A stretch of 64,000 nt of DNA, from positions 310,001 to 374,000 of the IMG/VR virus record IMGVR_UViG_3300034072_000926, one strand, 5' to 3'. Of the stretch, positions 16,249 through 32,201 are shown one piece after another. Each line of letters begins with the position of its first letter. Within the stretch, counting starts at the first letter, position 1. The notes under the pieces are model-generated. The model searched no databases. It saw only the letters and a list, made by a program, of their open reading frames with translations, and was not told where the DNA came from. The translations under genes were made by a program, and so were the position numbers.

Positions 16249-17466
16249 TTAGTTCCTCAGCACAAAGGCAATTCTTGCCAGTGTTGCGTCTGGACTTCCA
16301 GGGGCAACAAACTCCACTACATCGCCTAGCACAAAATTGCGGTCGCCTGCGTTACCAATGACAATCGTTCCAGTCACACTCGATGCCGCGAAAGTAACCG
16401 TGCCAATCGTTACATCGTTCTTCCTAATATTGAAGACCGTGCTGGCAGTTGCGGCCACGCCTGCTACCGCGATGGAGTTCGCGACCACTACAGTGAAGCT
16501 AGTATCCACTACATCAACCACCCTCGAGTTCGCCTCAGGAGTTGCCTCGAATGCCCTAATGCTGTGGACCAATTGTGCGGCCAGTCCAGTGACATCAGAG
16601 ATCGCATGAGTGTGACTTGCATCAGCTTTAGTTGCCATCGCTGCCGCGTAGCCAGTCAGGGTAGTGATATCGTGGTTATGAGTGGTTGCCGACTTACCAT
16701 CTAGTTCAGTCTGGAGACCCGTTACTTGACTGATAGTATGGGTGTGGTTAGTGGCTGCCTTGCCATTTAGTGCCGTCTGGGTTGCATCGCTCACAGGCTT
16801 ATCGGCGTCACTGGTATTGTCCACATTATTCAGTGCCAACAGTGTCTTCACTTGCGTGGTCGTCAGTTCTAGTGCCGCGCCAGCACCTGTGGTATTCTTA
16901 CCAAGTAAAACCTGGCCTGCTGCCAATGAAATATCTGCGGCCACATGAGTGTGGATAGTATTTGCCTTACCATCAAGGGCAGTCTGCTGAGCAGTCGAGA
17001 CCGGCTTCGAGGCATCGCTAGTATTCGAGACGTTTGCGAGACCCACAGCACTCTTATCCAGTGTCTGCCAGCTCTTATCACCCCTCCAATACTGACCAGT
17101 CGTGCCAGCCGTAATGCTGTTCTCCTTGGCAGCAATTGCACTCGCCTGCGCGGTGGAAACTGGCTTATTGGCGTCCGAGGTATTATCCACGTTTCCAAGA
17201 CCAACATCGCCCTTTGTGAGGGTGAGGAAAGTCTTAGCCGTCGAGGCATCAAGTAGAGTTAAGGCGCCGCCGCCTGAATCACGGCCAATAAAGCCCGCGC
17301 CAGTCTGCGTTAGTCCGCTACCGATAATATTACCCTTAGCTACCTTCTCATCTAGTCCAGTATAGAGTTCGTCGAAGTTGCCCTTCGTCTTTTGGAACGC
17401 TGACCTGATAGTGTCGCCAGTGCCGTCATTGGCGGCGGTTCCAACATTGATTACTTGCTTTGCCAT
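16249..17466 (-). CDS. Tail/whisker fibre protein
   Basis: N-terminus KQVINVGTAANDGTGDTIRSAF.K..GNFDELY like T4 gp9/gp10 N-termini; three VGLGNVDNTSDA.KPVS.A repeats; HTH.ISDVTGL phage-tail repeats. Confidence 0.85.
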   Translation of the reverse strand: MAKQVINVGTAANDGTGDTIRSAFQKTKGNFDELYTGLDEKVAKGNIIGSGLTQTGAGFIGRDSGGGALTLLDASTAKTFLTLTKGDVGLGNVDNTSDANKPVSTAQASAIAAKENSITAGTTGQYWRGDKSWQTLDKSAVGLANVSNTSDASKPVSTAQQTALDGKANTIHTHVAADISLAAGQVLLGKNTTGAGAALELTTTQVKTLLALNNVDNTSDADKPVSDATQTALNGKAATNHTHTISQVTGLQTELDGKSATTHNHDITTLTGYAAAMATKADASHTHAISDVTGLAAQLVHSIRAFEATPEANSRVVDVVDTSFTVVVANSIAVAGVAATASTVFNIRKNDVTIGTVTFAASSVTGTIVIGNAGDRNFVLGDVVEFVAPGSPDATLARIAFVLRN

Positions 17467-20575: not shown

Positions 20576-23413
20576 TTACCTTTCCCCTGGTGGAAATTTG
20601 TAGTATTTAATCTCCGACTGAAGAGATCGGTCGAAAGTTGTTGGATTAGTTGTCGGCGTGTCTGGGTTCTCTGGACCATCAAAAGTGATAATATTGAGGA
20701 AGTCCATATCCATCGAATCGTCATCATTCCAAATGCCGTCAGTATCATCATAGAATGTTGTCGAAGAGAAGCCGTCACTCGACAGTAGATATCTATCTAC
20801 TTCGATTGAACTACCCTGGAGGTCAGTATTCATACCCGAAGTTGAAAGAGTCCTCACAATAGCAGGACCACTACCCGCTCTCACATACGCAAGTTCAATC
20901 GCGCACTGATATCCAATAACGGTCGATGGCTTACCAAGTTCTTGTTCGCACATCATCCACAATGGAAGACCTTCTCGTCCCAAAATGCCAATGCCTTGCT
21001 GACCCTGAAGTCGGTTGAACTTGTTGATAAGGTCGAGACGCAGGTTATTCACACTGTTGGGGAAATATTGATCCATTTCCTTAGTGAGATTCCACTGTTC
21101 AATCGCCCTTGGGACTTGTCCCACCACATAGCGAGGTAGTCGTTCCTCAACGCCATTCGAGTCAAAACCACCTGCTCCCTCCATGGGATCATTCACAGTC
21201 AAGTAAATGACATCATAGAGGTGAGTTCCTTCTGGTGAACGCGCCCTTGCGCTCCTGACCTCACCTACCCTGAGAGTGGTAGGATGGTGATAGTCCTTAA
21301 GGAAATCTAGGAAGTTTCCACCAGTGAAGTTCAATCCATTTGTAATCAAAATCCTGTATTCTCGCTTCTTACCAAAGTAAGAATCTGCGCGCCTGAATAG
21401 ATTGTCCCAACCCAATACTGTGAGTTTATTTGAGGTCGCTCCTGGGGCCTGATTGATGTAGCGGATTACTTTGATCTGAACACCGTTTGGAGGCGCCAGA
21501 TAAGTAGAAGCCACACCTGCGTAGGTAACACCACTTTGTGAATTATTGTAGAATCCAAATCGACCATCCGAAAAGGTTCCATTCACATCACACTGTAGAA
21601 CGCCATCCACCCAAACCTTAAGATTTGTAGCAGTGAATTCAATGTCAAAGGTATAGGACTGGCCATGTTGCCAACCCACGCTGCCAAGTGTTGATCCACG
21701 CGCCAACTCAGTAACACCGCCAGAAGGAACATGGTTCCAACTTGCACTGGTGCTAGACAATCCCTTCTTTACTTGAGAAACGGCAAATCCTGGAGGAGTT
21801 GCATCCTGCTGACCTTTCTTCCAGTCAATCATTAGGAAGTCAGTCGTAGTGGACGCAATATCACCTGGTTTGAAACCGACCACAAATCCAATAAAGTCAT
21901 CATCGCCGGCATTTGCAGCGACTTGAATGGTTCCCGAGAGCTTCTTACCAAACGCCAAATAATCACTATAGAATACGGTCGCGGTGCCATTGATAGACTG
22001 GCGAACAGTAGAGTTGCCAGCTTGGACCGTCCAGTTACCGTTGCCTTCCGCAGTCCAACCAGTCAGGTCGGTATAGGTATTGTCAACACCTGTTACAAAT
22101 TCCACATAATCTTTGTCACCCTCGTTGAGTTCATTGTAGGGACGATTAGTAACCTGGTCGTCAATGAGGACGACAATTGTGTCGTCAGTCTTACCAGTTA
22201 CCCTAGACGGAGCAAGGAACTTAGTCGTAACGCCATTACCAGTATAGATCAGAGAATTTTCAGTATAGTCGGGACGGACTTCTGCTTTGTTACCCCAAAT
22301 CCAGCGCGCAATCTTTGACCTTACCTGTGGAGGAACATTGACATGCAGACTGGTTGTTGCATCGGAAGTGAAAATGTTCCTGATGGTGATACTAAAGGTG
22401 CGCTCACCAGCAATACTAGATAGACGAACTGCACCAGTATCATTGTGAACAAAGACAACGCGAGCCTCAACAGTGAACTCGGAAGTCTTGTTGATAGTCA
22501 CGTAGGGACAACGTCCAATAATCATTCCGGACATAGGATCGAGAATCAAGCCGTCTGGAAGTGGTTTGCTCTTAGCGGTCAGACTATACTGAATGGACTG
22601 AGTCTCACTCGAAGTCACGCCATTCACTTCATACTGTGGCACCGCCTTGACTGCAAAGTGACTGGGATATGTCTCATAAGTCGACCCTAGACTTCCCGCT
22701 GGCGTCTCCCAACGCACCGCGTCTGATAGTCGGGCGTCAAGCACAATCTCCTCACCAATAGTTAGGCGATAGATCTTCTCAGAAGTCCTGGGCGCACCTT
22801 CTTTGCGTGGATTGCTGATTAGATCGTCAGGGTCTCGCGCATAGACTCGGAAATAATAGTCACCAGGACTGTTTCCAGTAATGGTGGGTGATCCTACCAG
22901 TCGTCCCTGTGTATCAACTTCAAGTCCAAGAGGGAGACCCTGAAATGTTCCAACTGGTCCCACATACCCGACTGCCTTATAGACAAGTGGATCCTGGTCA
23001 GGATTGACAATGTCTAGCTGAACGGTAAGACCTGACCCTCTATTGAACGTGCCGAGATACTGGATTCCGGTCGGAATGTTCCAGTGCTGTTCTTCATCAA
23101 CAGGATCGACAATTAGATTAAAGGATCGGTCGTAAGTCCTAGTTGAGTTCTGGAAGTTAACACGGAAGACAACAGGGTATTCAGTCTGTCCCTTGGGAAG
23201 TTGTTCAATCGTTCCCATGATCTTACGAGTTCCACCATTATAGTAGAGTCCCTGTGGTAAAATGCCACCAATCAAGTCGATTGAGTTGAAATCTCCATAG
23301 AGAGGATGAAGGGTATTGAGCTGCAAAGTAATGTTCGCAGTATCACCTCGTAGCCATGGGTTACCGTCATTTAGCAACGCTCCAGATGTGGGTGATGCCC
23401 AAATAGATGCCAT
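20576..23413 (-). CDS. Large virion structural protein with Ig-like repeats and an inserted thrombospondin C-terminal-like domain
   Basis: Start moved to ATG 23413 (AGGAGG RBS, TAAATA); LPxGL.L..G.I.G Ig repeats; DDDFIGFVVGF...MIDWK...GRFGFYNNSQ; C-terminal LPLWM...IEVDRY. Confidence 0.8.
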   Translation of the reverse strand: MASIWASPTSGALLNDGNPWLRGDTANITLQLNTLHPLYGDFNSIDLIGGILPQGLYYNGGTRKIMGTIEQLPKGQTEYPVVFRVNFQNSTRTYDRSFNLIVDPVDEEQHWNIPTGIQYLGTFNRGSGLTVQLDIVNPDQDPLVYKAVGYVGPVGTFQGLPLGLEVDTQGRLVGSPTITGNSPGDYYFRVYARDPDDLISNPRKEGAPRTSEKIYRLTIGEEIVLDARLSDAVRWETPAGSLGSTYETYPSHFAVKAVPQYEVNGVTSSETQSIQYSLTAKSKPLPDGLILDPMSGMIIGRCPYVTINKTSEFTVEARVVFVHNDTGAVRLSSIAGERTFSITIRNIFTSDATTSLHVNVPPQVRSKIARWIWGNKAEVRPDYTENSLIYTGNGVTTKFLAPSRVTGKTDDTIVVLIDDQVTNRPYNELNEGDKDYVEFVTGVDNTYTDLTGWTAEGNGNWTVQAGNSTVRQSINGTATVFYSDYLAFGKKLSGTIQVAANAGDDDFIGFVVGFKPGDIASTTTDFLMIDWKKGQQDATPPGFAVSQVKKGLSSTSASWNHVPSGGVTELARGSTLGSVGWQHGQSYTFDIEFTATNLKVWVDGVLQCDVNGTFSDGRFGFYNNSQSGVTYAGVASTYLAPPNGVQIKVIRYINQAPGATSNKLTVLGWDNLFRRADSYFGKKREYRILITNGLNFTGGNFLDFLKDYHHPTTLRVGEVRSARARSPEGTHLYDVIYLTVNDPMEGAGGFDSNGVEERLPRYVVGQVPRAIEQWNLTKEMDQYFPNSVNNLRLDLINKFNRLQGQQGIGILGREGLPLWMMCEQELGKPSTVIGYQCAIELAYVRAGSGPAIVRTLSTSGMNTDLQGSSIEVDRYLLSSDGFSSTTFYDDTDGIWNDDDSMDMDFLNIITFDGPENPDTPTTNPTTFDRSLQSEIKYYKFPPGER

Positions 23414-23433
23414 GGTTTTCCTCCTACTCGCTA

Positions 23434-23463
23434 TATTTATTGGGTAGTCAAACCATATAAATA
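23434..23463. promoter_or_regulatory. Divergent T4-like late promoters
   Basis: AATAAATA on minus (around 23434-23441) and a perfect TATAAATA on plus (23456-23463), matching the T4 gp55 late consensus. Confidence 0.8.
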
Positions 23464-23488
23464 CGCTACAGAACAAGGAGAGAACACC

Positions 23489-24463
23489 ATGGGAATCAGA
23501 ATTACAGGTCGATATATTCCTAGTGGCAAGTTGAGGTTTAGGCGCTCTCTTATCGCTCCTATCTTTGCTTCCCTGCCAAGCATCACTCATCCAGATCTAC
23601 TTGCTACGAGCACCTTTACCGCAGTAACGGGAACGGTTCTTCCGGCCAATGCTGTGATTACTCGTCGCTGGCTACTTGACGGTCAAGTGATTGGAACAGG
23701 TGAGACTGTTGTGCCAAATGCAACCGGTTCTCTTGTACTTGAGGTTACTGCAACAAATGGTGCAGGCTCAGTCACCGAAACTACCGCTCCACTTGTTTTG
23801 ACTTTCCCAGTTCCAACCTTCACTGTCAATCCAAGTATCAGTCCAAATGGTGGTCCGATGGATTCGCTCTTTACTGGTAATGACGGAACCTTTGCAAATG
23901 GAACGGTGACTTCGAGGTTGTGGTTGTTGAATGGCGAAGTAATCAACGGCGCAACCGAGAATACCTATATCCCAGATGGTATGGGTCCTCTGATCTACCG
24001 CGTGACCATCACTGGTCCAGGTGGCACTCTTACTCGTTCATCCTCTCCTGTCACAGTAACGGCAGTTCCTGAGAAGTTGAATCCACCTACTTGGAATATG
24101 CAGACTGGTAACTTGGGCACCTTCGCAGAAGGCACCTCTATCAGTATTCCACTATTGGCAGTTGACTCGGAAAACAATATTCAGAAGTATGAAGTAACGA
24201 GCGGTGCTCTTCCAAACGGAACGTCCTTGAACCTGATGACTGGTCTGATTACCGGTGAATTGGCAGAAGTTGTCGCCGACACCGTTTACACCTTTACTAT
24301 CAGGGTTACTGACCGAACCAATTTGACATTGACAGGAACGTTCTCGATCAACGTCGCAAACGTGAAGACCACTGTTTTGTGGGAAACTGATAATGAAACG
24401 ACTCTTGCAGAACCTGCACCAGGTGAGCCTGTAAGTGTTACCTTGGAGGCATCAAGTAACTAA
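23489..24463 (+). CDS. Virion Ig-like domain protein (He_PIG-type), ends with an incomplete Ig repeat
   Basis: Two T..W..G..I Ig-like units, one complete GALPNGTSLNLMTGLITG...YTFTIRVTD repeat; AGGAGAG RBS. Confidence 0.8.
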   Translation: MGIRITGRYIPSGKLRFRRSLIAPIFASLPSITHPDLLATSTFTAVTGTVLPANAVITRRWLLDGQVIGTGETVVPNATGSLVLEVTATNGAGSVTETTAPLVLTFPVPTFTVNPSISPNGGPMDSLFTGNDGTFANGTVTSRLWLLNGEVINGATENTYIPDGMGPLIYRVTITGPGGTLTRSSSPVTVTAVPEKLNPPTWNMQTGNLGTFAEGTSISIPLLAVDSENNIQKYEVTSGALPNGTSLNLMTGLITGELAEVVADTVYTFTIRVTDRTNLTLTGTFSINVANVKTTVLWETDNETTLAEPAPGEPVSVTLEASSN

Positions 24464-25614
24464 TGGCTAAAATACTTTCCATCCGTTACACTATTGTCGG
24501 CGGAAGCTTGCCTAATGGCATGAAGCTGAATCCTGATACTGGTAATATCACAGGTTCTCCTGGTTTTGATGCTTTAGGACAAGGTCCTGCTTGGCAAGGA
24601 CCAGCTAGTGGAAGTTTGGGTTCTTACAATGAGGGCGATGCGTTTAGTTCTGTCACGCTCTCTGCAAATACTGATAAGACTCCGGTAATATTCAGTCTTC
24701 CCACTACTAAGGATGTTCTTCCTTGGGGCATTCAGATCAATCCAACAACTGGCGTGATTAGTGGAACTTTCTCCCCTCTTCTATTACGAGTTAAAGAAGA
24801 AGGTAGCACAAGTGATGGTCCGGTCTGGAATACACCGTTTGGTAAACTTGCAGGATATGATGAGGACTTTGTTGCCAGCGTAAGTCTGTCAGCGACGCCG
24901 ATCCTTAATAGGACTCTAAAGTATTACGAACTGGTATCGGGTTATCTTCCTTGGGGATTGAAACTGAATACACAGACTGGCGTAATTTCGGGATCTGTAG
25001 GTCGACTAAAGACTCCGGGTGTATTCGTAGACGTTCCCAAATTGCCAATCCCTGTTTGGGTTACTGCAACAAATATGGGAACCTTTCATGAAGGTGAGGC
25101 ATTCAATACTTCACTTGTCGCAACACCTGATGCGGGCAGATCCCTTGTCAAATATACCGTGAGAGAAGGTTATTTGCCCTGGGGGTTGAAACTGAATACC
25201 CAGAATGGCAATATTGCAGGCACTCTTGTTGATATCTTCAAGCGAAATGAAGCCAACTATTATGATGCAACTAAGGATCCAGTATTCAGCAATACTGTGA
25301 GCTTGAATGGATCGAATACAACAGTTGGTGAGGGCGGTAGTCTTGGATCCTATGCTAAGGGAGCCAGTATGACTGCTACCGTGACCGCAGCACCGACAAG
25401 TGGTAGAACAATAAGAAACTATTCGGTGACTATTGGAGCGCTTCCATTCGGTCTAAAGCTGAATAAACTCACAGGTGAGGTTTCAGGAACCATTGTAAAT
25501 ACGACAATGGTTCAGAGTAAAAGTTACTCATTCACAATTACGGCATACGATCAGGGTGGTAGTTTTAATCTAGTCAACCACGCAAGCCGTTCCTATACAA
25601 TTACGGTCCAATAA
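24463..25614 (+). CDS. Putative-Ig (He_PIG-type) repeat virion protein, copy A1
   Basis: Five LP[WF]GL.LN..TG.ISG repeats; TAATG overlap. Confidence 0.85.
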   Translation: MAKILSIRYTIVGGSLPNGMKLNPDTGNITGSPGFDALGQGPAWQGPASGSLGSYNEGDAFSSVTLSANTDKTPVIFSLPTTKDVLPWGIQINPTTGVISGTFSPLLLRVKEEGSTSDGPVWNTPFGKLAGYDEDFVASVSLSATPILNRTLKYYELVSGYLPWGLKLNTQTGVISGSVGRLKTPGVFVDVPKLPIPVWVTATNMGTFHEGEAFNTSLVATPDAGRSLVKYTVREGYLPWGLKLNTQNGNIAGTLVDIFKRNEANYYDATKDPVFSNTVSLNGSNTTVGEGGSLGSYAKGASMTATVTAAPTSGRTIRNYSVTIGALPFGLKLNKLTGEVSGTIVNTTMVQSKSYSFTITAYDQGGSFNLVNHASRSYTITVQ

Positions 25615-25625
25615 GGGGTAAAACA

Positions 25626-26801
25626 ATGGCAGTATTTCCTTTCACCGTCCGAGCAACCGACAGCGAAGGCTCTTACTCGGATCGTCAATTCAATATTACG
25701 GTTCGAAACAGTCGAGTAGAACGTTTCATGGTTATTGACTCGTCCGACGCATGGACTAGTCCTGACGGCACTACCTGGACTCAGAGACTTGGCCAGGGCG
25801 GAGTCGCTTGTGCTTATGGCAACGGCTTTTGGCTAATTGTTAAGTCTGGAACTTTCAGTATTTCTAAGAGCTCCGATGGTATCAATTATAACTCTATTCT
25901 TTCAGCCAACATGACTTATTTGGATGAAGGCGGCGCCACAGTGACAGCACCAGTAACAACTGGTGTAACGCGCCTTAAGTTCTTCAATGGTAAGTTCTAT
26001 ATGGTTGCACCTATGTCAACTTCCTATTTTTTATGGACAACAGTTGATGGTATTACTTGGAATCGAAAGACTCTATTTGCATCAGTGAATACTGATTTGG
26101 GATCGGCTATGGCCGCAGGTTCTAATTTTTCTCGTTTCGAGTTCTGCGAAGATGGAGACACTCTGATCATTCCTTTCAGTGTTCGAGGATCAACAAACGT
26201 GGCAAGCGGATATTCTACTTGCTTGGGTTGGACTACCACTGATGGTGTGACTTTTAATCAGATCAAGAATATTTCCAATACCACAGCTACGATTGCAGGA
26301 TGTTCTTACTTGAGTCGAGTAAATGGCATGTATATTGCTCAAGGCGGTAGCCATAACAATACGGTTCAAGCGGCTAATAACTATATCTATAGTTCAGATG
26401 GTATCAACTGGACAGTAGGTACCTATCCAGGTAATGCTGGCACAACGTCAGCGACTGCAAATACTAGGATTTTCTATTCTAATGGTCAGCTATACTTGTT
26501 CACAGGTAAAGGAACAACAGCAGGACCAGGGTATTATTACACCAGTCTTGATGGTATTACTTGGACAGAGAATAGCTACAAGAAGTTCCAGACCTCGAAT
26601 AGTGCTCAATATACCTATGCGTTGTATAAGAATGGTATCTATCTTGTAACCGCAAGTCTTGCTAGTGGTGTAGACACCACTACTGACTTTTCTGCTCCAA
26701 ATAACGGTTTTCGACTTTCAGTCGACGGTGTAAACTGGACATACGTGAATACAAGAGCTGTTGGCACAACCTATTCCTATAATGATATTGCAGCAATGTA
26801 A
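25626..26801 (+). CDS. BNR/Asp-box beta-propeller putative receptor-binding protein, copy B1
   Basis: Repeated S.DG.[TN]W motifs; N-terminal FTVRATDSEG...RQFNITV hairpin. Confidence 0.8.
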   Translation: MAVFPFTVRATDSEGSYSDRQFNITVRNSRVERFMVIDSSDAWTSPDGTTWTQRLGQGGVACAYGNGFWLIVKSGTFSISKSSDGINYNSILSANMTYLDEGGATVTAPVTTGVTRLKFFNGKFYMVAPMSTSYFLWTTVDGITWNRKTLFASVNTDLGSAMAAGSNFSRFEFCEDGDTLIIPFSVRGSTNVASGYSTCLGWTTTDGVTFNQIKNISNTTATIAGCSYLSRVNGMYIAQGGSHNNTVQAANNYIYSSDGINWTVGTYPGNAGTTSATANTRIFYSNGQLYLFTGKGTTAGPGYYYTSLDGITWTENSYKKFQTSNSAQYTYALYKNGIYLVTASLASGVDTTTDFSAPNNGFRLSVDGVNWTYVNTRAVGTTYSYNDIAAM

Positions 26802-27955
26802 TGGCAACTAAAAAGATCCTCTCAATCCGCTATACCTTGGTAGCAGGACAGCTACCAAATGGTATAACTCTAAACCCTGATACTGGGGCGCTTTCGGGCT
26901 CTCCAGGCTCGGATGCTCTTGGTCTTGGTCCAACCTGGAACACCACTGCTGGTAGCATCGGAACATATGATGAAGGTAATACCATTACCACCGTGACCTT
27001 TAATACTACCTCAAATAAAGGACCAGTATCCTATGGTCTAGCGAGCGATGACGACAAACTTCCTTGGGGACTTGAACTTAATCCGGTGTCTGGAACAATA
27101 TCGGGAACCATTGCACCACTTCTACTTCGTGTCGCCGAAGCAGGAGTTACCTTTGATGGCCCGACCTGGACGACACCTTTTGGTCGTCTAGCAGCTTACG
27201 ATGAGGATTTTGTTTCAAGTATCAGCCTGACTGCCGCACCGCGCGGAAGCAGAACAATCAAGCATTACCAAGTGATTGACGGAGCTCTTCCTTGGGGTCT
27301 TGAATTGAATGGACCGACTGGTGTCATTTCGGGCAAGGTTGGACGACTAAAGAATCCAGGTGCGTTCGTTGACGTTCCTAAGTTGCCGATTCCAGTTTGG
27401 ACTAATAGTGCGGCTCTTGGAACTATTTGCGAATATGAAAGTGCCACCTATACTTTGATTGCGACTCCTGATACTGGTCGTTCGATGGCTAAGTATTCGA
27501 TTCGTGAAGGTGCCTTACCATTCGGCCTAACAATCAATTCTCAGACCGGTGTTATTTCCGGATCAGCCGTCGAGCTGAAGAAGCGAAACGAACCAGTGTA
27601 TTATGATGCGACAAATGATCCAACCTTCTCAAATACTGTGAAGATCAATAATGTTGATACCACAGTTCAGGACGGTGGTTCTATTGGATCGTATGCCAAG
27701 GGAGCGACCGTTTCTGCAATTTTCTCGGCGACTGCGGTTTCCGGAAGAGCTATCAGGAATTATGCGATAACTAATGGTGTTCTACCGTTTGGCTTATCAC
27801 TTAATAGTATGACTGGTGAGATCTCAGGAACCATTCTTAATACTGTTCGTGTTCAATCAAAGACTTATACTTTCACAGTAACGGCTATTGATAAGAATGC
27901 GAATTACTTCTTACAAAATAAGACCAGTAGGTCTTTCACTCTAACTGTTCAGTAA
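26801..27955 (+). CDS. Putative-Ig repeat virion protein, copy A2
   Basis: Colinear paralogue of 24463-25614. Confidence 0.85.
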   Translation: MATKKILSIRYTLVAGQLPNGITLNPDTGALSGSPGSDALGLGPTWNTTAGSIGTYDEGNTITTVTFNTTSNKGPVSYGLASDDDKLPWGLELNPVSGTISGTIAPLLLRVAEAGVTFDGPTWTTPFGRLAAYDEDFVSSISLTAAPRGSRTIKHYQVIDGALPWGLELNGPTGVISGKVGRLKNPGAFVDVPKLPIPVWTNSAALGTICEYESATYTLIATPDTGRSMAKYSIREGALPFGLTINSQTGVISGSAVELKKRNEPVYYDATNDPTFSNTVKINNVDTTVQDGGSIGSYAKGATVSAIFSATAVSGRAIRNYAITNGVLPFGLSLNSMTGEISGTILNTVRVQSKTYTFTVTAIDKNANYFLQNKTSRSFTLTVQ

Positions 27956-27967
27956 AGGACTCAAAAG

Positions 27968-29146
27968 ATGGCAGTATTCAATTTTACAGTTCGCGCAACG
28001 GATAGTGAGGGTTCCTACGCGGATCGTCAATTCAATATCACTGTTCGCAATAGTCGTGTCGAGCGCTTCATGATCGTCGATAATAATGACGCCTGGACTT
28101 CGCCAGATGGAACCACTTGGACCCAACGAGTAGGTCAGGGCGGAGTTACTTGTGAATATGGTAACGGTTTCTGGTTGATTAAGGCCGGTGCCGCTTACAA
28201 TGCTGGTTTTCGTAAAAGCACAGATGGTATCAACTACAATTTCATCCCTTACTCTTCTTTGATTTGTTTAGAAGCAGACGGATCTACTGCTACAAGCAAT
28301 CCTCTTTCGTCAGTAGGCACATCACAAGCGAGACTGAAGTTTTGGAATGGAATGTTTTGGCTTGTCGCATTAAGCCCTAGCTACTATCATATTTGGGCTT
28401 CCGTTGATGGTATCACTTGGGTAAGGAAATTTTCTCAAACATGGACTACAACTTCCGCAAGCTTGACGACTGCAACTGTACCAAGTATTGAACCAACTGT
28501 GGATGGTGATACTATGTTCTTTCCATCATTTTATGGTAACATTACGATTAGTGGAGCAAATGCTCCAGCTGGATGGTCGACGACTGATGGAACTACATTC
28601 AATGTCATCCGAGATATTGCGATCACTACTGCGGCTGCCGGCGGTGCGCAGCAACTAATGCGAGTCAATGGTCTTTATATTGGTCGAGGAATGTCCTCGA
28701 CCACAACGGTAACTGCCGATTACAAATACTCGACTGATGGTGTGAACTGGACGACGGTAGCTAATCCAGGATCAATATTTGGTTCCGGTATCACAGCGGC
28801 GTCGTCGTTGATCTATGCTAATGGTAAATTGTATTGGTTTAACAGAAAGTCGGCCTCTAATGCCTACTCTGGTGAACAGTATTGGACATCAGTCGATGGT
28901 ATAAATTGGACGCTCAAATACATGAAATTGTTCAACTCAACCACATCCGAACGCTACACCAAAGTTATCTTTAAGAACGGTTTGTTCATTGCAATCGGTA
29001 GTGTAGGTCAGGCAGCAGGAACTGACGAATCATCGGATTTGACGGCTATCAATAATGGTTTCCGAGTATCACTCGATGGAGAAACATGGACCTGGGTCAA
29101 CGCGCGAGCAATCGTCACTTTATATAACGATGTCGCAGCAATGTGA
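27968..29146 (+). CDS. BNR/Asp-box beta-propeller putative receptor-binding protein, copy B2
   Basis: Paralogue of 25626-26801 with near-identical N-terminus and divergent body. Confidence 0.8.
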   Translation: MAVFNFTVRATDSEGSYADRQFNITVRNSRVERFMIVDNNDAWTSPDGTTWTQRVGQGGVTCEYGNGFWLIKAGAAYNAGFRKSTDGINYNFIPYSSLICLEADGSTATSNPLSSVGTSQARLKFWNGMFWLVALSPSYYHIWASVDGITWVRKFSQTWTTTSASLTTATVPSIEPTVDGDTMFFPSFYGNITISGANAPAGWSTTDGTTFNVIRDIAITTAAAGGAQQLMRVNGLYIGRGMSSTTTVTADYKYSTDGVNWTTVANPGSIFGSGITAASSLIYANGKLYWFNRKSASNAYSGEQYWTSVDGINWTLKYMKLFNSTTSERYTKVIFKNGLFIAIGSVGQAAGTDESSDLTAINNGFRVSLDGETWTWVNARAIVTLYNDVAAM

Positions 29147-29257: not shown

Positions 29258-29893
29258 TCATTGGTCGTCTGCGGGCTTTTCTATCTCGTCAATGAGAGTT
29301 ATCCGTTCAGTGACATGGATCTCATCATGCGACAATTTGAACATCATCACATCTTTGGGATCGTTGAAGAAGTAGGTCGCGTTGAAATGAACATTGGCCG
29401 AGTAATCGTTGGGACGATCCTTAAAATAATCCCTGCACCATTCTGACATCTCACGAATATGTTCAGTAGAATAGGATCCATTCCTGAGCCTGGCCTTAAC
29501 TCGCACCGCATAACGGAACTTGTCGAAGAATAGCTTCTTGCGAATGATTACCTTCTCGGAGTCGAGAACTTTCGCATGGTTGCTGTTCAGGGGTTTCTCA
29601 TATTCGACAAAGTTCTCCTCACCGATAACAGACTTGAGGTATTCAAAGACTTGCTCGTCTTTGAAGAACACAGTGAAGTGAATCGAGTTAGTCTTCCAGC
29701 TGAAATGGGTGTGCCATTGTCCGCTCGAAGTCTGAATACCGCGCCAATCAGCTTTGCTATACTTTCTATTCATCAGCCAAGTAATGACTTCCTGAGTTGG
29801 AAGTTTCTTGTCCTTTTCTGTGATTTGGCAGTTGACAACTAGGCGTCGGTCGAATACTTTATAGTAGAGTTTCTTTGTAGCCAGTTCTTTCAT
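29258..29893 (-). CDS. Two-domain FKLxW-related protein
   Basis: FFKDEQVFEYLK and FFNDPKDVMMFKLSH. Confidence 0.75.
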   Translation of the reverse strand: MKELATKKLYYKVFDRRLVVNCQITEKDKKLPTQEVITWLMNRKYSKADWRGIQTSSGQWHTHFSWKTNSIHFTVFFKDEQVFEYLKSVIGEENFVEYEKPLNSNHAKVLDSEKVIIRKKLFFDKFRYAVRVKARLRNGSYSTEHIREMSEWCRDYFKDRPNDYSANVHFNATYFFNDPKDVMMFKLSHDEIHVTERITLIDEIEKPADDQ

Positions 29894-29901
29894 AATACTT
29901 C

Positions 29902-30141
29902 CTAAAAGCGAAGCCTAATCATCATTGCATCGCGATCTGAATATGCAGTGATTACGATTGACAGCCTGGAAGTGTTTACAGTTGGACCGGGAACGACTGA
30001 CGGATGAGCAGATACGACTCCGTGCCATTCTACTTCGTTAACCCATTCCTTAAACCCTTTATAGTCCATATCTCCCAAGAGGATTTGGAAGCGATGCCGA
30101 CCGTCCTCAAAGAAATAGGTTAGGATTCGAGCGTCATTCAC
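29902..30141 (-). CDS. FKLxW-motif protein (third cluster)
   Basis: AYSDRDAMMIRLRF. Confidence 0.7.
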   Translation of the reverse strand: MNDARILTYFFEDGRHRFQILLGDMDYKGFKEWVNEVEWHGVVSAHPSVVPGPTVNTSRLSIVITAYSDRDAMMIRLRF

Positions 30142-30443
30142 CAGAACCTCGCTTTGAAAAGCCTTGCCTTTTTCTTTTCAAAAATTCGGATAGTGACGAA
30201 GTAAAATGTATTACCACACATTGTGAATGATTTATCAAATTCTGGTTTACTGCGACGCTCAGGGACTTTTGCAAACTCGTAAGAACCTGCAAAAGCATCG
30301 AGCCAATCCTTCATCAGATCAACATCGTTTACAAGGATTTCAAATACATAAGCATGTGGTCGAACGAGCGGATCGCCTTGGTAAGAAGACACCCAAGCGT
30401 CTTCTTCTCCAAAATATTCTGCGAATGAGATAAGGTCTTCCAT
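30138..30443 (-). CDS. FKLxW-motif protein (third cluster)
   Basis: IFEKKKARLFKARFW. Confidence 0.7.
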   Translation of the reverse strand: MEDLISFAEYFGEEDAWVSSYQGDPLVRPHAYVFEILVNDVDLMKDWLDAFAGSYEFAKVPERRSKPEFDKSFTMCGNTFYFVTIRIFEKKKARLFKARFW

Positions 30444-30481
30444 TGCCCTACAATAAAGGCAAGGTCACGCGGAAGTCATTA

Positions 30482-30718
30482 TTAGTGTGACATGCGACAC
30501 CAAAGAGCGCTTGACTTCTCGATGAAATGGAAACTGCACGACCAGTTCTGGTCATCGACCTGCATGACTTCACCGGCGGTCCAGGTCTTGTCCTCTAGGT
30601 GATCCATGCACCAATGTTTGACATATGCCAGTTCAAGCAAAGTGCCGCGATACACAAGCACGAATGGGAGAGGGTATTCCTCTTTCCCTGTAAAGTCGTG
30701 GTAATACTTGAGTTTCAT
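30482..30718 (-). CDS. FKLxW-motif protein (third cluster)
   Basis: VKHWC...FHFIEKSSALWCRMSH. Confidence 0.7.
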   Translation of the reverse strand: MKLKYYHDFTGKEEYPLPFVLVYRGTLLELAYVKHWCMDHLEDKTWTAGEVMQVDDQNWSCSFHFIEKSSALWCRMSH

Positions 30719-30987
30719 ATCGCGCTCAGCTTGAACCTGAGGGCATCTGAGGGCGACTTGAATGCGAACTTTGTCTGCACTTCAGCAGTCGTAAGACCTT
30801 TTGCGAAATTAACCCTGTTCTGAATACCGAGTGGGGTTCCAGCATTGGTGGGTTCATTCGCGCTGTAGATGACCCACATGGTTTTGTTTTTGTCGCACCA
30901 TTGCCGTGCCCGTTCCACTTCGTCGACAGTGCCGGTGAAGTAGATCCAGGTCAGGCCGTTAACGACTAGGGTTTTATCAAATCTCAT
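30715..30987 (-). CDS. FKLxW-motif protein (third cluster)
   Basis: FKSPSDALRFKLSAI. Confidence 0.75.
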   Translation of the reverse strand: MRFDKTLVVNGLTWIYFTGTVDEVERARQWCDKNKTMWVIYSANEPTNAGTPLGIQNRVNFAKGLTTAEVQTKFAFKSPSDALRFKLSAI

Positions 30988-31226
30988 GTCACACTCAACT
31001 TGAACATCATTGCGTCATTTTTGGATTGAAAGGTCACGACCATGTAATGGGCATCTTTCAATCCACTATCCGGGAGGACACAGATCGGACCAATCGATAC
31101 ATCTTTGCCATATCGCTCGAAGGTTTCAAGAGATATTAGGCGTAGACTTTGCGGAGTGGCAGATACCCAAACGGATACCTGTCCACTACTTGGCCAATTG
31201 TCAAGTGATCGGAGGTGTTTCGTCAT
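30984..31226 (-). CDS. FKLxW-motif protein (third cluster)
   Basis: FQSKNDAMMFKLSVT. Confidence 0.75.
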   Translation of the reverse strand: MTKHLRSLDNWPSSGQVSVWVSATPQSLRLISLETFERYGKDVSIGPICVLPDSGLKDAHYMVVTFQSKNDAMMFKLSVT

Positions 31227-31238
31227 AGTGGATAGGGC

Positions 31239-32201
31239 TTACCAATCGGAGCCACCGCCTCCGCCACCGCCCGAGCCACCATCGCCGGAGAATGAATCCG
31301 AAGAGGAGGAACCAGAGGATGAACCCCAGTCATAAGAGGGCGGGCTAGGAGGGGGAGAAGACCGCATCCAAGAATCGTCATAGGACGGAGCAGGTGGAGG
31401 TGGCGGAGGTGAATAGGTCGACTTTGGTGCCGGGATGGTCGGGACAGGTTTGATCGGGACAGTGGGTCGATACGTCGTATGCTGACGCACGATTTCCTCA
31501 GCCTTTGGGCGATCCTTTGCGACTGCCTTTCTTGCTTCTTCGTATTGAGCCTCGCGTTCCGCGGCTTCCTTCCTTTCATTTCGTATTGAAAAGATTAGGA
31601 CAAGGATACTGCCTCCTGCAAGGGCACCAAGGAACAAGAGCAGAACAAAGCCCGCCGAATCACTGCCGTTTTGTTCTGCTGCGCGGCGTTTGTCCGAAGT
31701 GGCAACCTGTTGAGCGGTCACAACTTCCTTTGTGATTTGCTTTTCGATGCCGGAGATACCCGTGAGGATTGCCGTCCCAGGGTATCCGTTCCGCATATAG
31801 GACTTCATTGACTCGGTGATTTCCACGCTCTTCGCGTCGGTGAGTTCACCTTCCAGGCCATAACCAACAGCGATTTGGAGACGCCGAGGGTTGCTCATGC
31901 TGACGATGAGTAGAACGCCGTCATTGCGTTCCTTGCTGCCCAGCTTATAGTGGCGCAGAGCTTTCACGCCATAGTCCGCAGGGTCCTGACCACCCATATC
32001 TTTCAGGGTCAGAACTGCGACTTGGTGATGAGTCTCTTTGTAGATACGGCGGAGTTCACCGTCGATCGTTGCCTTCTGGATCGGCCCGAGAATATCTGCC
32101 TGGTCGATCACAGGACTTCCGTTCATCGCCGGAAAGTTATCAGCGGCCAATGCTGGGACTGAACAGGTCAGCGCAGCCAAGGCCAGGATCAGCCGTTTCA
32201 T
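31239..32201 (-). CDS. TPM-domain (YgcG/DUF477-type) membrane protein
   Basis: Signal peptide; VIDQADIL...QVAVLT...LGSKERNDGVLLIVS...IAVGYGLEGELTD; TM helix; Gly/Ser tail SFSGDGGSGGGGGGGSDW. Confidence 0.9.
   Translation of the reverse strand: MKRLILALAALTCSVPALAADNFPAMNGSPVIDQADILGPIQKATIDGELRRIYKETHHQVAVLTLKDMGGQDPADYGVKALRHYKLGSKERNDGVLLIVSMSNPRRLQIAVGYGLEGELTDAKSVEITESMKSYMRNGYPGTAILTGISGIEKQITKEVVTAQQVATSDKRRAAEQNGSDSAGFVLLLFLGALAGGSILVLIFSIRNERKEAAEREAQYEEARKAVAKDRPKAEEIVRQHTTYRPTVPIKPVPTIPAPKSTYSPPPPPPAPSYDDSWMRSSPPPSPPSYDWGSSSGSSSSDSFSGDGGSGGGGGGGSDW

What the first reader, a model, noticed from the sequence alone, without database searches (positions are those of the whole stretch)
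24378..28050. Ig domains split across gene boundaries: possible strand-complementation sockets for swappable propeller heads
Seen: the complete repeat in 23489-24463 reads W..G.LG.F.EG..S..L.A...YEV..GALP.G.SLN..TG.ITG...YTFTIRVTD...FSINV. That gene ends after only the first third of another repeat (...GEPVSVTLEASSN*). The next gene starts with the middle (SIRYTIVGGSLPNGMKLNPDTGNITGSP). The missing last hairpin (FTVRATDSEG...RQFNITV) is the N-terminus of the propeller genes B1 and B2. In A1 and A2, four of five repeats lack this hairpin and only the last is complete. Established: pilus subunits complete Ig folds by donor-strand complementation. Inference: A proteins form a chain of open Ig sockets, each completed in trans by the N-terminal hairpin of a receptor-binding propeller, giving a branched modular adhesion fibre. 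I know of no such description for phage fibres.
Basis: partly seen in the sequence, partly recalled or inferred. Interest (0 to 1): 0.72.

Follow-up and report, generated by a model that had tools for sequence, protein, structure and literature searches.

The report
Ig domain split across phage fibre genes
In a 465-kb jumbo phage, an immunoglobulin-like repeat is cut into pieces carried by three neighbouring virion-fibre genes, which most likely lock together by lending each other beta-strands, a new form of a joint already seen in other phage fibres.

Summary
G0 (23489-24463) ends with strands A-B of a He_PIG repeat. A1 and A2 begin with the middle strands. B1 and B2 begin with the F-G hairpin. 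Repeats 1-4 of A1/A2 lack that hairpin and only repeat 5 is complete. The split is conserved in every relative examined, including Atu_ph07, Phosso and the metagenomic jumbo phages, so it is not an error or a pseudogene. Other lineages encode G0 and A as one chain with the split repeat contiguous, yet hairpin-bearing B genes still follow. The first 35 residues of B are 76% identical across homologues, against 33% for the propeller. The Atu_ph07 homologues gp239, gp240 and gp241 are all virion proteins.

A complex prediction put the B1 hairpin against strands A and C of A1 repeat 4. The score was 0.42 against a best control of 0.18, which the tool rates as weak support.

The "four sockets, four heads" reading is unproven. 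Single chains carry up to 19 hairpin-less repeats with only two B genes seen. Strand-completion joints in phage fibres are already published (GP4, Bas63, A1002). Best reading: a G0-A-B fibril joined by trans strand complementation and tipped by a BNR propeller. This is a new variant of a known kind.

The parts
23489..23548 (+). G0 N-terminal ~20-residue conserved motif (M-G-I-R-x-x-G-R-Y-x-P-x-G-x-L-R-F). Presumed virion anchor.
   Evidence: Conserved in the G0 family and also at the N-terminus of the fused G0+A proteins of other lineages. Its function is inferred.
23558..24073 (+). G0 spacer: two ~85-residue Ig-like modules, whose number varies from 0 to 3 among homologues.
   Evidence: G0 family alignment: homologues of about 150, 236, 324 and 408 aa differ by whole modules.
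24083..24376 (+). G0 complete He_PIG repeat (residues 199-296).
   Evidence: Pfam He_PIG 41.5 bits. Family profile positions 1-98, 145.6 bits.
24377..24463 (+). G0 tail: strands A-B of a further repeat (residues 297-324) followed by the stop. The stop overlaps the A1 start as TAATG.
   Evidence: Maps to profile positions 7-28. A tail of this kind ends every G0 homologue. The stretch is contiguous with the next strands in fused relatives.
24463..24564 (+). A1 head: middle strands (C, C', E) of the split repeat, with no F-G hairpin.
   Evidence: Profile positions 35-59, E 3e-8. All A homologues start here.
24586..25245 (+). A1 truncated repeats 2-4 (residues 42-103, 120-186, 197-261) with conserved linkers. 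Repeat 4 is the predicted docking site for the B hairpin.
   Evidence: Profile coverage stops at positions 60-67. In the AF2 monomer the C-strand segments are unpaired. In the ESMFold2 complex, A1 195-266 touches B1 2-33.
25333..25614 (+). A1 repeat 5, complete with its own F-G hairpin, followed by the stop.
   Evidence: Profile positions 8-91. pLDDT is 94-97.
25626..25712 (+). B1 N-terminal F-G hairpin (residues 1-29).
   Evidence: Profile positions 68-94. AF2 strands 2-11 and 17-26, with pLDDT 64-81 against >90 for the propeller. Mean pairwise identity is 76% over residues 1-35 against 33% for the rest.
25725..26801 (+). B1 six-bladed BNR/Asp-box beta-propeller. Presumed glycan-binding head.
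   Evidence: AF2 pTM 0.86. Foldseek finds 6-bladed propellers. A profile search of PDB finds sialidases, E 1e-5. Seven Asp-box-like motifs. Similar propellers sit on phage tail-fibre proteins in BFVD.
26801..27955 (+). A2: paralogue of A1 (59% identity) with the same layout. Head is residues 1-36, truncated repeats are 44-105, 121-186 and 198-261, and the complete repeat is 291-384.
27968..29146 (+). B2: paralogue of B1 (about 52% identity) with a nearly identical hairpin (residues 1-29) plus a propeller.

Best explanation
G0, A1/A2 and B1/B2 are subunits of a thin, beads-on-a-string virion fibril (a whisker or side fibre) of a jumbo myophage. They are joined without covalent bonds by inter-chain beta-strand complementation of cadherin-like He_PIG domains.

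Joint 1. The last 28 residues of a G0-type protein supply strands A-B. The first ~34 residues of an A protein supply strands C-C'-E. Together they make one repeat from two chains. The genome has two tail-bearing proteins, G0 and a second one 33 kb upstream.

Joint 2. The invariant N-terminal F-G hairpin of a B protein inserts next to strands A and C of a hairpin-less repeat of A. The best guess is the last such repeat, beside the terminal complete repeat. This hangs a six-bladed BNR/Asp-box propeller, the likely glycan-binding head, on the fibril.

Overlapping or closely spaced genes (TAATG overlaps, 11-12 nt gaps) suggest translational coupling, hence co-production.

Shown: the split, its register and its conservation; the natural fusions; virion location in Atu_ph07; the propeller fold.

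Inferred: that the pieces reassemble as a domain; which repeat receives the hairpin; the stoichiometry; receptor binding.
For: - The register of the three pieces on a family profile is exact.
- G0-A-B triplets with the same cut points occur in Atu_ph07, in Phosso at two loci, and in nine metagenomic jumbo-phage loci at 27-60% identity.
- Whole-genome census: two tails, two heads and two hairpins.
- Rosetta-stone fusions exist. P0129, P0130, P0131, P0135, P0144 and P0263 carry the G0 anchor, complete repeats, 4-11 truncated repeats and a final complete repeat in one chain. The G0-tail plus A1-head sequence aligns colinearly to their contiguous first truncated repeat, with z up to 9.5.
- Hairpin-bearing B genes follow these fused genes too.
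- The B hairpin is 76% identical across homologues against 33% for the propeller.
- An almost identical hairpin occurs in cis in a complete repeat of P0162.
- In the AF2 model of B1 the hairpin is a long two-stranded ribbon with lower confidence than the propeller.
- In the ESMFold2 complex of G0(192-324)+A1+B1, the median score is 0.42 against a best control of 0.18. Runs 1 and 2 agree at 95%. B1 residues 2-33 touch A1 195-199 and 226-239, which are strands A and C of repeat 4.
- Atu_ph07 gp239, gp240 and gp241 were all found in virions by MS as separate gene products.
- There is structural precedent for incomplete sandwiches completed in trans in phage whiskers and fibres.
Against: - The complex prediction is rated only 'weak support' by the tool. 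Run 3 put B elsewhere. The control with A replaced still scored 0.18.
- The tool scores only the partner chain, so the G0-A joint itself was never evaluated.
- AF2 gives the truncated repeats of A1 alone pLDDT of about 80-90, so they may fold without a donor.
- Arrays of 9-19 truncated repeats in single chains suggest a self-sufficient module.
- There is no experimental structure and no stoichiometry. The Atu_ph07 MS peptide counts show no clear excess of B.
Confidence: 0.55

Rival explanations
1. A is a rope of open Ig sockets, and every hairpin-less repeat (four per A, up to about 20 in relatives) is filled by the hairpin of a B propeller. The result is a multivalent bottle-brush adhesin.
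For: - All truncated repeats lack the same two strands.
- The last truncated repeat does not differ visibly from internal ones of its type.
- Arrays longer than three internal truncated repeats are followed by two B genes (4 of 4). Arrays of three are followed by one.
- Long arrays alternate two repeat types.
- An A protein with its own LamG head still has a B gene.
- There is precedent: rope proteins with 5-11 tandem docking sites in GP4 and A1002.
Against: - Only one docking site was seen in the single prediction possible.
- AF2 folds the truncated repeats alone with fair confidence.
- Atu_ph07 peptide counts show no large excess of B over A.
- The link between array length and number of B genes is confounded by shared ancestry.
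Confidence: 0.22
2. Only the G0/A cut is a reassembling joint, or neither cut is. The 76-residue hairpin-less repeat is an autonomous domain whose conserved linker covers the core. The B hairpin serves another purpose: binding a different virion protein, or packing on its own propeller.
For: - Long single-chain arrays of truncated repeats exist.
- The linkers are conserved and partly hydrophobic.
- The AF2 monomer confidence is fair.
- The complex score is weak, and a control scored 0.18.
Against: - The hairpin carries the exact He_PIG F-G signature and is far more conserved than the propeller.
- B always lies directly downstream of A.
- In the AF2 monomer the C-strand segments of the truncated repeats have no partner and parts of the linkers fall below pLDDT 50.
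- The hairpin is the least confident part of the B1 model.
Confidence: 0.2
3. The split is an artefact or a pseudogene: a sequencing frameshift, a decaying gene, or pieces fused by programmed frameshifting at the TAATG overlaps.
For: Adjacent reading frames overlap by one base, and fused versions exist in other lineages.
Against: - The same cut points occur in independent genomes at 27-60% identity, with intact ORFs.
- Overlaps of 1, 4 or 8 nt give different frame offsets, and I saw no slippery heptamer.
- There are Shine-Dalgarno-like sequences before G0, A1 and B1.
- The Atu_ph07 products were detected as separate gene products, each most abundant in a different gel band.
Confidence: 0.03

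Closest known systems
Collar/rope-whisker assemblies of phages GP4 (Fiber-1 plus rope), Bas63 and Sf14 (PMC12609058)
   Same: The subunits of a thin phage appendage have incomplete beta-sandwiches that another polypeptide completes in trans, giving beads on a string.
   Different: There, an extended rope supplies the strands and the whisker dimers are the incomplete part. Here, the repeat string (A) is the incomplete part and the head (B) supplies a hairpin. Profile searches of PDB sequences with the A and B families found no such proteins. The domain family is also different (He_PIG).
Podophage A1002 split nozzle and chain-like fibre (PMC13730344)
   Same: A domain is divided between two gene products that fill in each other's missing strands. 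A rope protein has 11 tandem docking sites that bind two kinds of fibre protein by beta-sheet augmentation.
   Different: The proteins and folds are different (nozzle propeller/platform). The fibre units there are dimers. Here the setting is a jumbo myophage, the repeats are Ig-like, and the heads are monomeric BNR propellers.
Donor-strand complementation/exchange in chaperone-usher pili (Fim, Pap, Caf1). Cited from my own knowledge.
   Same: An Ig-like fold lacks its C-terminal strand(s), and the N-terminal extension of the next subunit completes it.
   Different: Pilins lack one strand (G). Here two strands (F-G) are missing and a hairpin is donated. Here the N-terminal A-B strands are also supplied in trans at a second joint. 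There is no chaperone or usher, and assembly is in the cytoplasm.
Ig-like strings on phage particles such as T4 Hoc and the Bas63 Hex-Dec protein (PMC10385173, PMC12609058)
   Same: A conserved anchor is followed by a variable number of Ig-like domains forming a flexible fibril.
   Different: Those are single chains of complete domains. They have no split domains and no separately encoded head.
Bead-chain neck fibre of Anabaena phage A-1(L), gp82-gp81-gp80 (PMC10966104)
   Same: Three adjacent genes encode the base, the repeating body and the distal carbohydrate-binding tip of one fibre.
   Different: Those subunits are trimers in a ratio of about 1:14:1. No split Ig domain is described.
Branched receptor-binding complexes with conserved N-terminal anchor domains, such as the CBA120 tailspikes and G7C gp63.1/gp66. 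Cited from my own knowledge.
   Same: The N-terminus is conserved and the distal receptor-binding part is variable. Attachment can be lateral.
   Different: Those anchors are folded domains of about 100 or more residues. Here the anchor is a 26-residue fragment of the acceptor's own domain family.

Membership tests
He_PIG (Pfam PF05345) Ig/cadherin-like repeat proteins | Match to the Pfam model above its gathering score. | tested here: met
   G0 41.5 bits, A1 103.4 bits and A2 116.1 bits, against a cut-off of 24. B1 and B2 have no Pfam hit.
He_PIG (Pfam PF05345) Ig/cadherin-like repeat proteins | Each repeat is a complete sandwich, with profile coverage from end to end. | tested here: not met
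   A1/A2 repeats 2-4 end at family-profile positions 60-67 of 98. The heads cover only 35-59, the G0 tail only 7-28, and the B heads only 68-94. The Foldseek hits of the A1 model are cadherin strings.
Chaperone-usher donor-strand complementation | An acceptor Ig fold that lacks its C-terminal strand. | tested here: inconclusive
   Two strands (F-G) are missing by profile coverage. Whether the fold is really open cannot be read from the AF2 summary.
Chaperone-usher donor-strand complementation | The N-terminal extension of another subunit occupies the missing position. | tested here: inconclusive
   ESMFold2 places B1 2-33 against strands A and C of A1 repeat 4. The score is 0.42 against a best control of 0.18, rated weak support.
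Chaperone-usher donor-strand complementation | A dedicated periplasmic chaperone and an outer-membrane usher. | not tested
   I did not search the genome for them. They are not expected for a phage particle assembled in the cytoplasm.
Rope/whisker chain-like fibres (GP4, Bas63, Sf14, A1002) | Sequence relationship to the solved components. | tested here: not met
   Profile searches of PDB chain sequences with the A and B families returned only SraP (E 4.5e-4) and sialidase-type propellers.
Rope/whisker chain-like fibres (GP4, Bas63, Sf14, A1002) | Incomplete sandwiches completed in trans along a string. | tested here: inconclusive
   One site was predicted with weak support.
BNR/Asp-box six-bladed propellers (sialidase-like) | Repeated Asp-box motifs and a six-bladed propeller fold. 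| tested here: met
   Seven S/T-x-D-G-x-x-W/F/Y motifs in each of B1 and B2. AF2 pTM 0.86. Foldseek finds 6-bladed propellers. PDB profile hits to sialidases, E 1e-5.
BNR/Asp-box six-bladed propellers (sialidase-like) | Pfam BNR_2 above its gathering score, and sialidase catalytic residues present. | tested here: not met
   B1 and B2 have no hit. Homologues reach 26.6-28.5 bits, below the 31.4 cut-off. I did not examine catalytic residues.

The most novel reading that the evidence does not exclude
The hairpin-less He_PIG repeats are a programmable rope. Each of the 4 repeats here, and up to about 20 in relatives, is an open socket that captures the F-G hairpin of a propeller head. Alternating socket types would select between two head types. 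The phage would then display a multivalent, combinatorial bottle-brush adhesin built entirely from split Ig domains.
Probability: 0.2. Interest if true: 0.8.

Novelty: new variant of a known kind. Interest (0 to 1): 0.6.

Why it matters
If the pieces reassemble as proposed, jumbo phages of the Atu_ph07 / Rak2-related group build their hair-like appendages from a natural split-Ig system. One joint is cut between strands B and C. The other is cut before the F-G hairpin.

This would explain three things:
- Why three otherwise unannotated virion proteins always travel together.
- How divergent propeller heads can be exchanged while a 26-residue plug stays invariant.
- How fibre length evolves by adding 76-residue units.

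It would also extend the recently discovered rope-and-bead principle of phage fibres to a new fold and to the reverse polarity, where the head plugs into the rope. It could offer a small natural tag-and-socket pair for protein engineering, and it gives a testable annotation for dozens of hypothetical proteins in jumbo-phage genomes.

Tried and rejected
- Megablast of the locus against GenBank phages found nothing. Relatives appeared only at the protein level.
- PHROGs gave no function for G0, A or B.
- Sequencing error or pseudogene: rejected because of conservation across genomes.
- Programmed frameshift at TAATG: rejected. The overlaps vary between loci, I saw no slippery site, and the MS detected separate products.
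- A single three-chain domain (G0 tail + A head + B hairpin) as the universal solution: weakened. One relative's head has its own F-G hairpin, and fused G0-A genes are still followed by hairpin-bearing B genes. The prediction also placed the hairpin on repeat 4. It remains possible in this lineage.
- Covariation between the hairpin and the A repeats: not attempted in earnest. The hairpin is almost invariant, and the roughly 25 cassettes are too few and too closely related.
- Literature searches for donor-strand or strand complementation together with phage tail fibres found no paper using those words. The relevant precedents turned up under 'chain-like fiber' and 'rope'.

Full report
**What is in the window**

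The window is positions 310001-374000 of a 465,259-bp IMG/VR virus record that CheckV rates as complete. Five co-directional genes cover the finding:
- G0, 23489-24463, 324 aa.
- A1, 24463-25614, 383 aa.
- B1, 25626-26801, 391 aa.
- A2, 26801-27955, 384 aa.
- B2, 27968-29146, 392 aa.

G0/A1 and B1/A2 overlap by one base (TAATG). A1/B1 and A2/B2 are 11 and 12 nt apart. Shine-Dalgarno-like sequences precede G0, A1 and B1.

On the other strand, directly upstream, lie fibre-type genes:
- A 1004-aa He_PIG/LamG-like protein.
- A 1029-aa protein with a pectinesterase-like stretch and tail-fibre PHROG matches.
- A 405-aa protein with a T4 gp9/10-like N-terminus and phage tail repeats.

These place the locus in a tail-fibre or baseplate-periphery module.

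**Checking the observation**

Pfam finds He_PIG in G0, A1 and A2 but nothing in B1 or B2. I built a 98-position profile from the complete repeats of the G0 family and scored the pieces against it.
- The G0 tail (residues 297-324) falls on positions 7-28.
- The A1 head (residues 8-32) falls on positions 35-59, E 3e-8.
- The B1 head (residues 3-28) falls on positions 68-93, E 1e-7.
- The three pieces laid end to end, inside the script only, match positions 7-93 as one domain at 50 bits, E 1e-16.
- A1 and A2 repeats 2-4 stop at positions 60-67. Repeat 5 is complete.

**Conservation**

Protein searches found the same gene order in two cultured jumbo phages. In Agrobacterium phage Atu_ph07 (490 kb) it is gp239-gp240-gp241. 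Sinorhizobium phage Phosso (469 kb) has it at two loci. It also occurs in nine further metagenomic jumbo-phage loci. In every case:
- The upstream protein ends after strands A-B.
- The A protein begins at the middle strands.
- Every B protein begins M-x-x-F-x-F-T-V-R-A-x-D...F-x-I-x-V.

The deposited start of Atu_ph07 gp240 is 25 codons too late. An ATG that overlaps the gp239 stop as ATGA restores the head.

The G0/A overlap is 1, 4 or 8 nt in different loci, giving different frame offsets. Together with the start signals, this argues for translational coupling and against frameshift fusion.

Residues 1-35 of B have a mean pairwise identity of 76%, against 33% for the rest of the protein.

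**Census of the genome**

Searching the whole 465-kb genome with the pieces and with the family profile gives exactly two hairpins (B1, B2) and two heads (A1, A2). It also gives two tail-bearing proteins. One is G0. The other is a second protein, G0', at genome positions 300695-301741 on the minus strand, outside the window. G0' has an N-terminal part unrelated to G0's, a complete repeat and a tail 65% identical to those of G0. It sits among large structural-looking genes.

**Natural fusions and long arrays**

An exhaustive search with A1 found long relatives. P0129, P0130, P0131, P0135, P0144 and P0263 (891-1376 aa) begin with the same short N-terminal motif as G0. They continue with 4-5 complete repeats, then 4-11 hairpin-less repeats, and end with one complete repeat. 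They are G0 and A in one chain. The G0 tail plus A1 head aligns colinearly to their contiguous first truncated repeat, with z up to 9.5 against shuffles. This is Rosetta-stone evidence that the G0 tail and the A head belong to one domain.

The fused gene of locus L016 is still followed by two hairpin-bearing B genes.

In locus L015 an upstream protein of at least 913 aa ends in a tail. The next protein, P0128 (1705 aa), starts with a head that has its own F-G hairpin, followed by one complete repeat, 19 hairpin-less repeats with a 76-residue period and two alternating types, and one complete repeat. At least two hairpin-bearing B genes follow before the contig ends.

Three conclusions follow:
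- The B hairpin is the constant feature.
- The G0/A cut is a lineage-specific state of a second joint.
- The target of the hairpin cannot be only the split repeat.

P0162 carries almost the same hairpin sequence in cis inside a complete repeat, which settles its homology.

A relative whose A protein is fused to a C-terminal LamG domain still has a hairpin-bearing B gene next to it. That fits lateral attachment.

**Structure predictions**

AlphaFold2 on A1 alone, with 32 sequences in the alignment, gave mean pLDDT 83 and pTM 0.42, a string of beads. In the truncated repeats the C-strand segments are not paired, and parts of the linkers (111-117, 185-190) fall below pLDDT 50. The truncated repeats themselves are at about 80-90. 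Foldseek finds cadherin strings.

B1 alone gave pLDDT 88.7 and pTM 0.86. It is a six-bladed propeller with a long N-terminal two-stranded ribbon (residues 2-11 and 17-26) of lower confidence, 64-81. Supporting evidence for the fold:
- Foldseek hits in PDB are 6-bladed propellers: designed and natural Kelch domains, plus the Vps10p domain of sortilin.
- A profile search of PDB sequences reaches sialidases at E 1e-5.
- B1 and B2 each have seven Asp-box-like motifs.
- Similar propellers end many phage tail-fibre proteins in BFVD, with Atu_ph07 gp241 on top.

The single complex prediction allowed was ESMFold2 on G0 192-324 + A1 + B1, with B1 as the partner. The median score was 0.42, the best control 0.18, and the tool's verdict was 'weak support'. 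The tool states that the mark was reached by 58 of 80 solved complexes and 2 of 110 mismatches, but that passes at or below 0.60 are more often wrong than right unless the guess was likely beforehand. Runs 1 and 2 agree at 95%; run 3 differs.

In the best run, B1 residues 2 and 4-31 plus one face of the propeller touch A1 195-199 and 226-239. These are strands A and C of repeat 4, the neighbours expected for strands G and F. They also touch repeat 5. The G0-A contact is not reported by the tool.

**Experimental anchor**

In the Atu_ph07 virion proteome (PMC6102473, Supplementary Table S5), three proteins were all detected:
- gp239: 15.8 kDa, 3 peptides, 40.6% coverage, most abundant in band 11.
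- gp240: 36.3 kDa as annotated, 2 peptides, band 5.
- gp241: 43.7 kDa, 6 peptides, band 6, the band of the 43.5-kDa capsid protein.

These are the homologues of G0, A and B. They are virion proteins, detected as separate gene products. The same paper describes tail fibres and thin 'hairy whiskers' on the particle.

**Precedents**

Searches for 'donor strand' or 'strand complementation' together with phage fibres found nothing. The principle is nonetheless published.
- In A1002 a nozzle is split between two proteins that fill in each other's missing strands. Eleven fibre dimers of two kinds bind a rope protein by augmented beta-sheets (PMC13730344).
- Phage A-1(L) has a three-gene bead-chain neck fibre (PMC10966104).

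**Mechanism**

Most likely, at confidence 0.55, a G0-type protein is fixed to the particle by its conserved N-terminus. Its C-terminal A-B strands and the C-C'-E strands of an A head form one repeat from two chains. A then extends the fibril by three hairpin-less repeats and one complete repeat. The F-G hairpin of a B protein plugs into a hairpin-less repeat, probably the last one, and anchors a BNR propeller that binds a host surface glycan.

Two tails, two heads and two nearly identical hairpins allow two fibre types, or mixing between them.

It now has a structural precedent in rope proteins. However, only one site was seen in the one prediction possible. The long arrays can be read either way.

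**Verdict**

This is a new variant of a known kind of phage fibre joint, in an unannotated and widespread jumbo-phage module. Interest 0.6.

Noticed in passing
L001:8974-9048 (Atu_ph07, MF403008.1 around 187408-187482): [quoted passage not shown] An in-frame ATG overlapping the gp239 stop (ATGA) restores the conserved head found in all homologues.
   Followed up: yes
Outside the window: G000:C1:300695-301741, minus strand (L013:6696-7742): This is a second tail-bearing protein (348 aa, P0114). It has an N-terminal part unrelated to G0's, then a complete He_PIG repeat and an A-B tail that are 65% identical to those of G0. It lies among large structural-looking genes and has no A gene beside it.
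   Followed up: partly
window 23413-23590, minus strand: The 1004-aa ORF overlaps the G0 start by about 100 nt if it is read from its first ATG. The real start is probably Met60, near position 23413. That would leave a short divergent intergenic region at 23414-23488. Relatives have a 931-aa protein here (L014).
   Followed up: no
window 16249-17466, minus strand: A 405-aa protein with a T4 gp9/gp10-like N-terminal domain (24.1 bits, just under the cut-off of 25) and phage tail repeats. It is a likely baseplate-attached fibre next to the locus.
   Followed up: partly
window 29258-31226, minus strand: A run of six small genes (78-211 aa), most of whose products end with a similar motif (roughly F-x-S-x-x-D-A-M-M-F-K-L-S). 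This looks like a paralogous family of unknown function. Pfam found nothing in the three I scanned.
   Followed up: no
window 31239-32201, minus strand: A protein with a signal-peptide-like N-terminus, a TPM domain (101.6 bits) and a proline- and glycine/serine-rich tail. This is unusual cargo beside a fibre module.
   Followed up: no
L014:6001-7713 (P0076): An A homologue is fused at its C-terminus to a Laminin_G_3 (concanavalin-like) domain. A hairpin-bearing B gene and a second full G0-A-B triplet still follow it.
   Followed up: partly
window 23489-23548, and the N-termini of P0129, P0130, P0131, P0135, P0144 and P0263: The first ~20 residues of G0-type proteins, and of the fused proteins, share a motif that looks like another short beta-hairpin. 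It may be a further plug-in anchor to an unknown virion partner. No second copy exists in this genome.
   Followed up: partly
P0128, P0130, P0137 and P0138: Hairpin-less repeats in long arrays alternate between two sequence types with different linkers, so the true period is two repeats (about 152 aa). In these examples the arrays grow by such pairs.
   Followed up: partly
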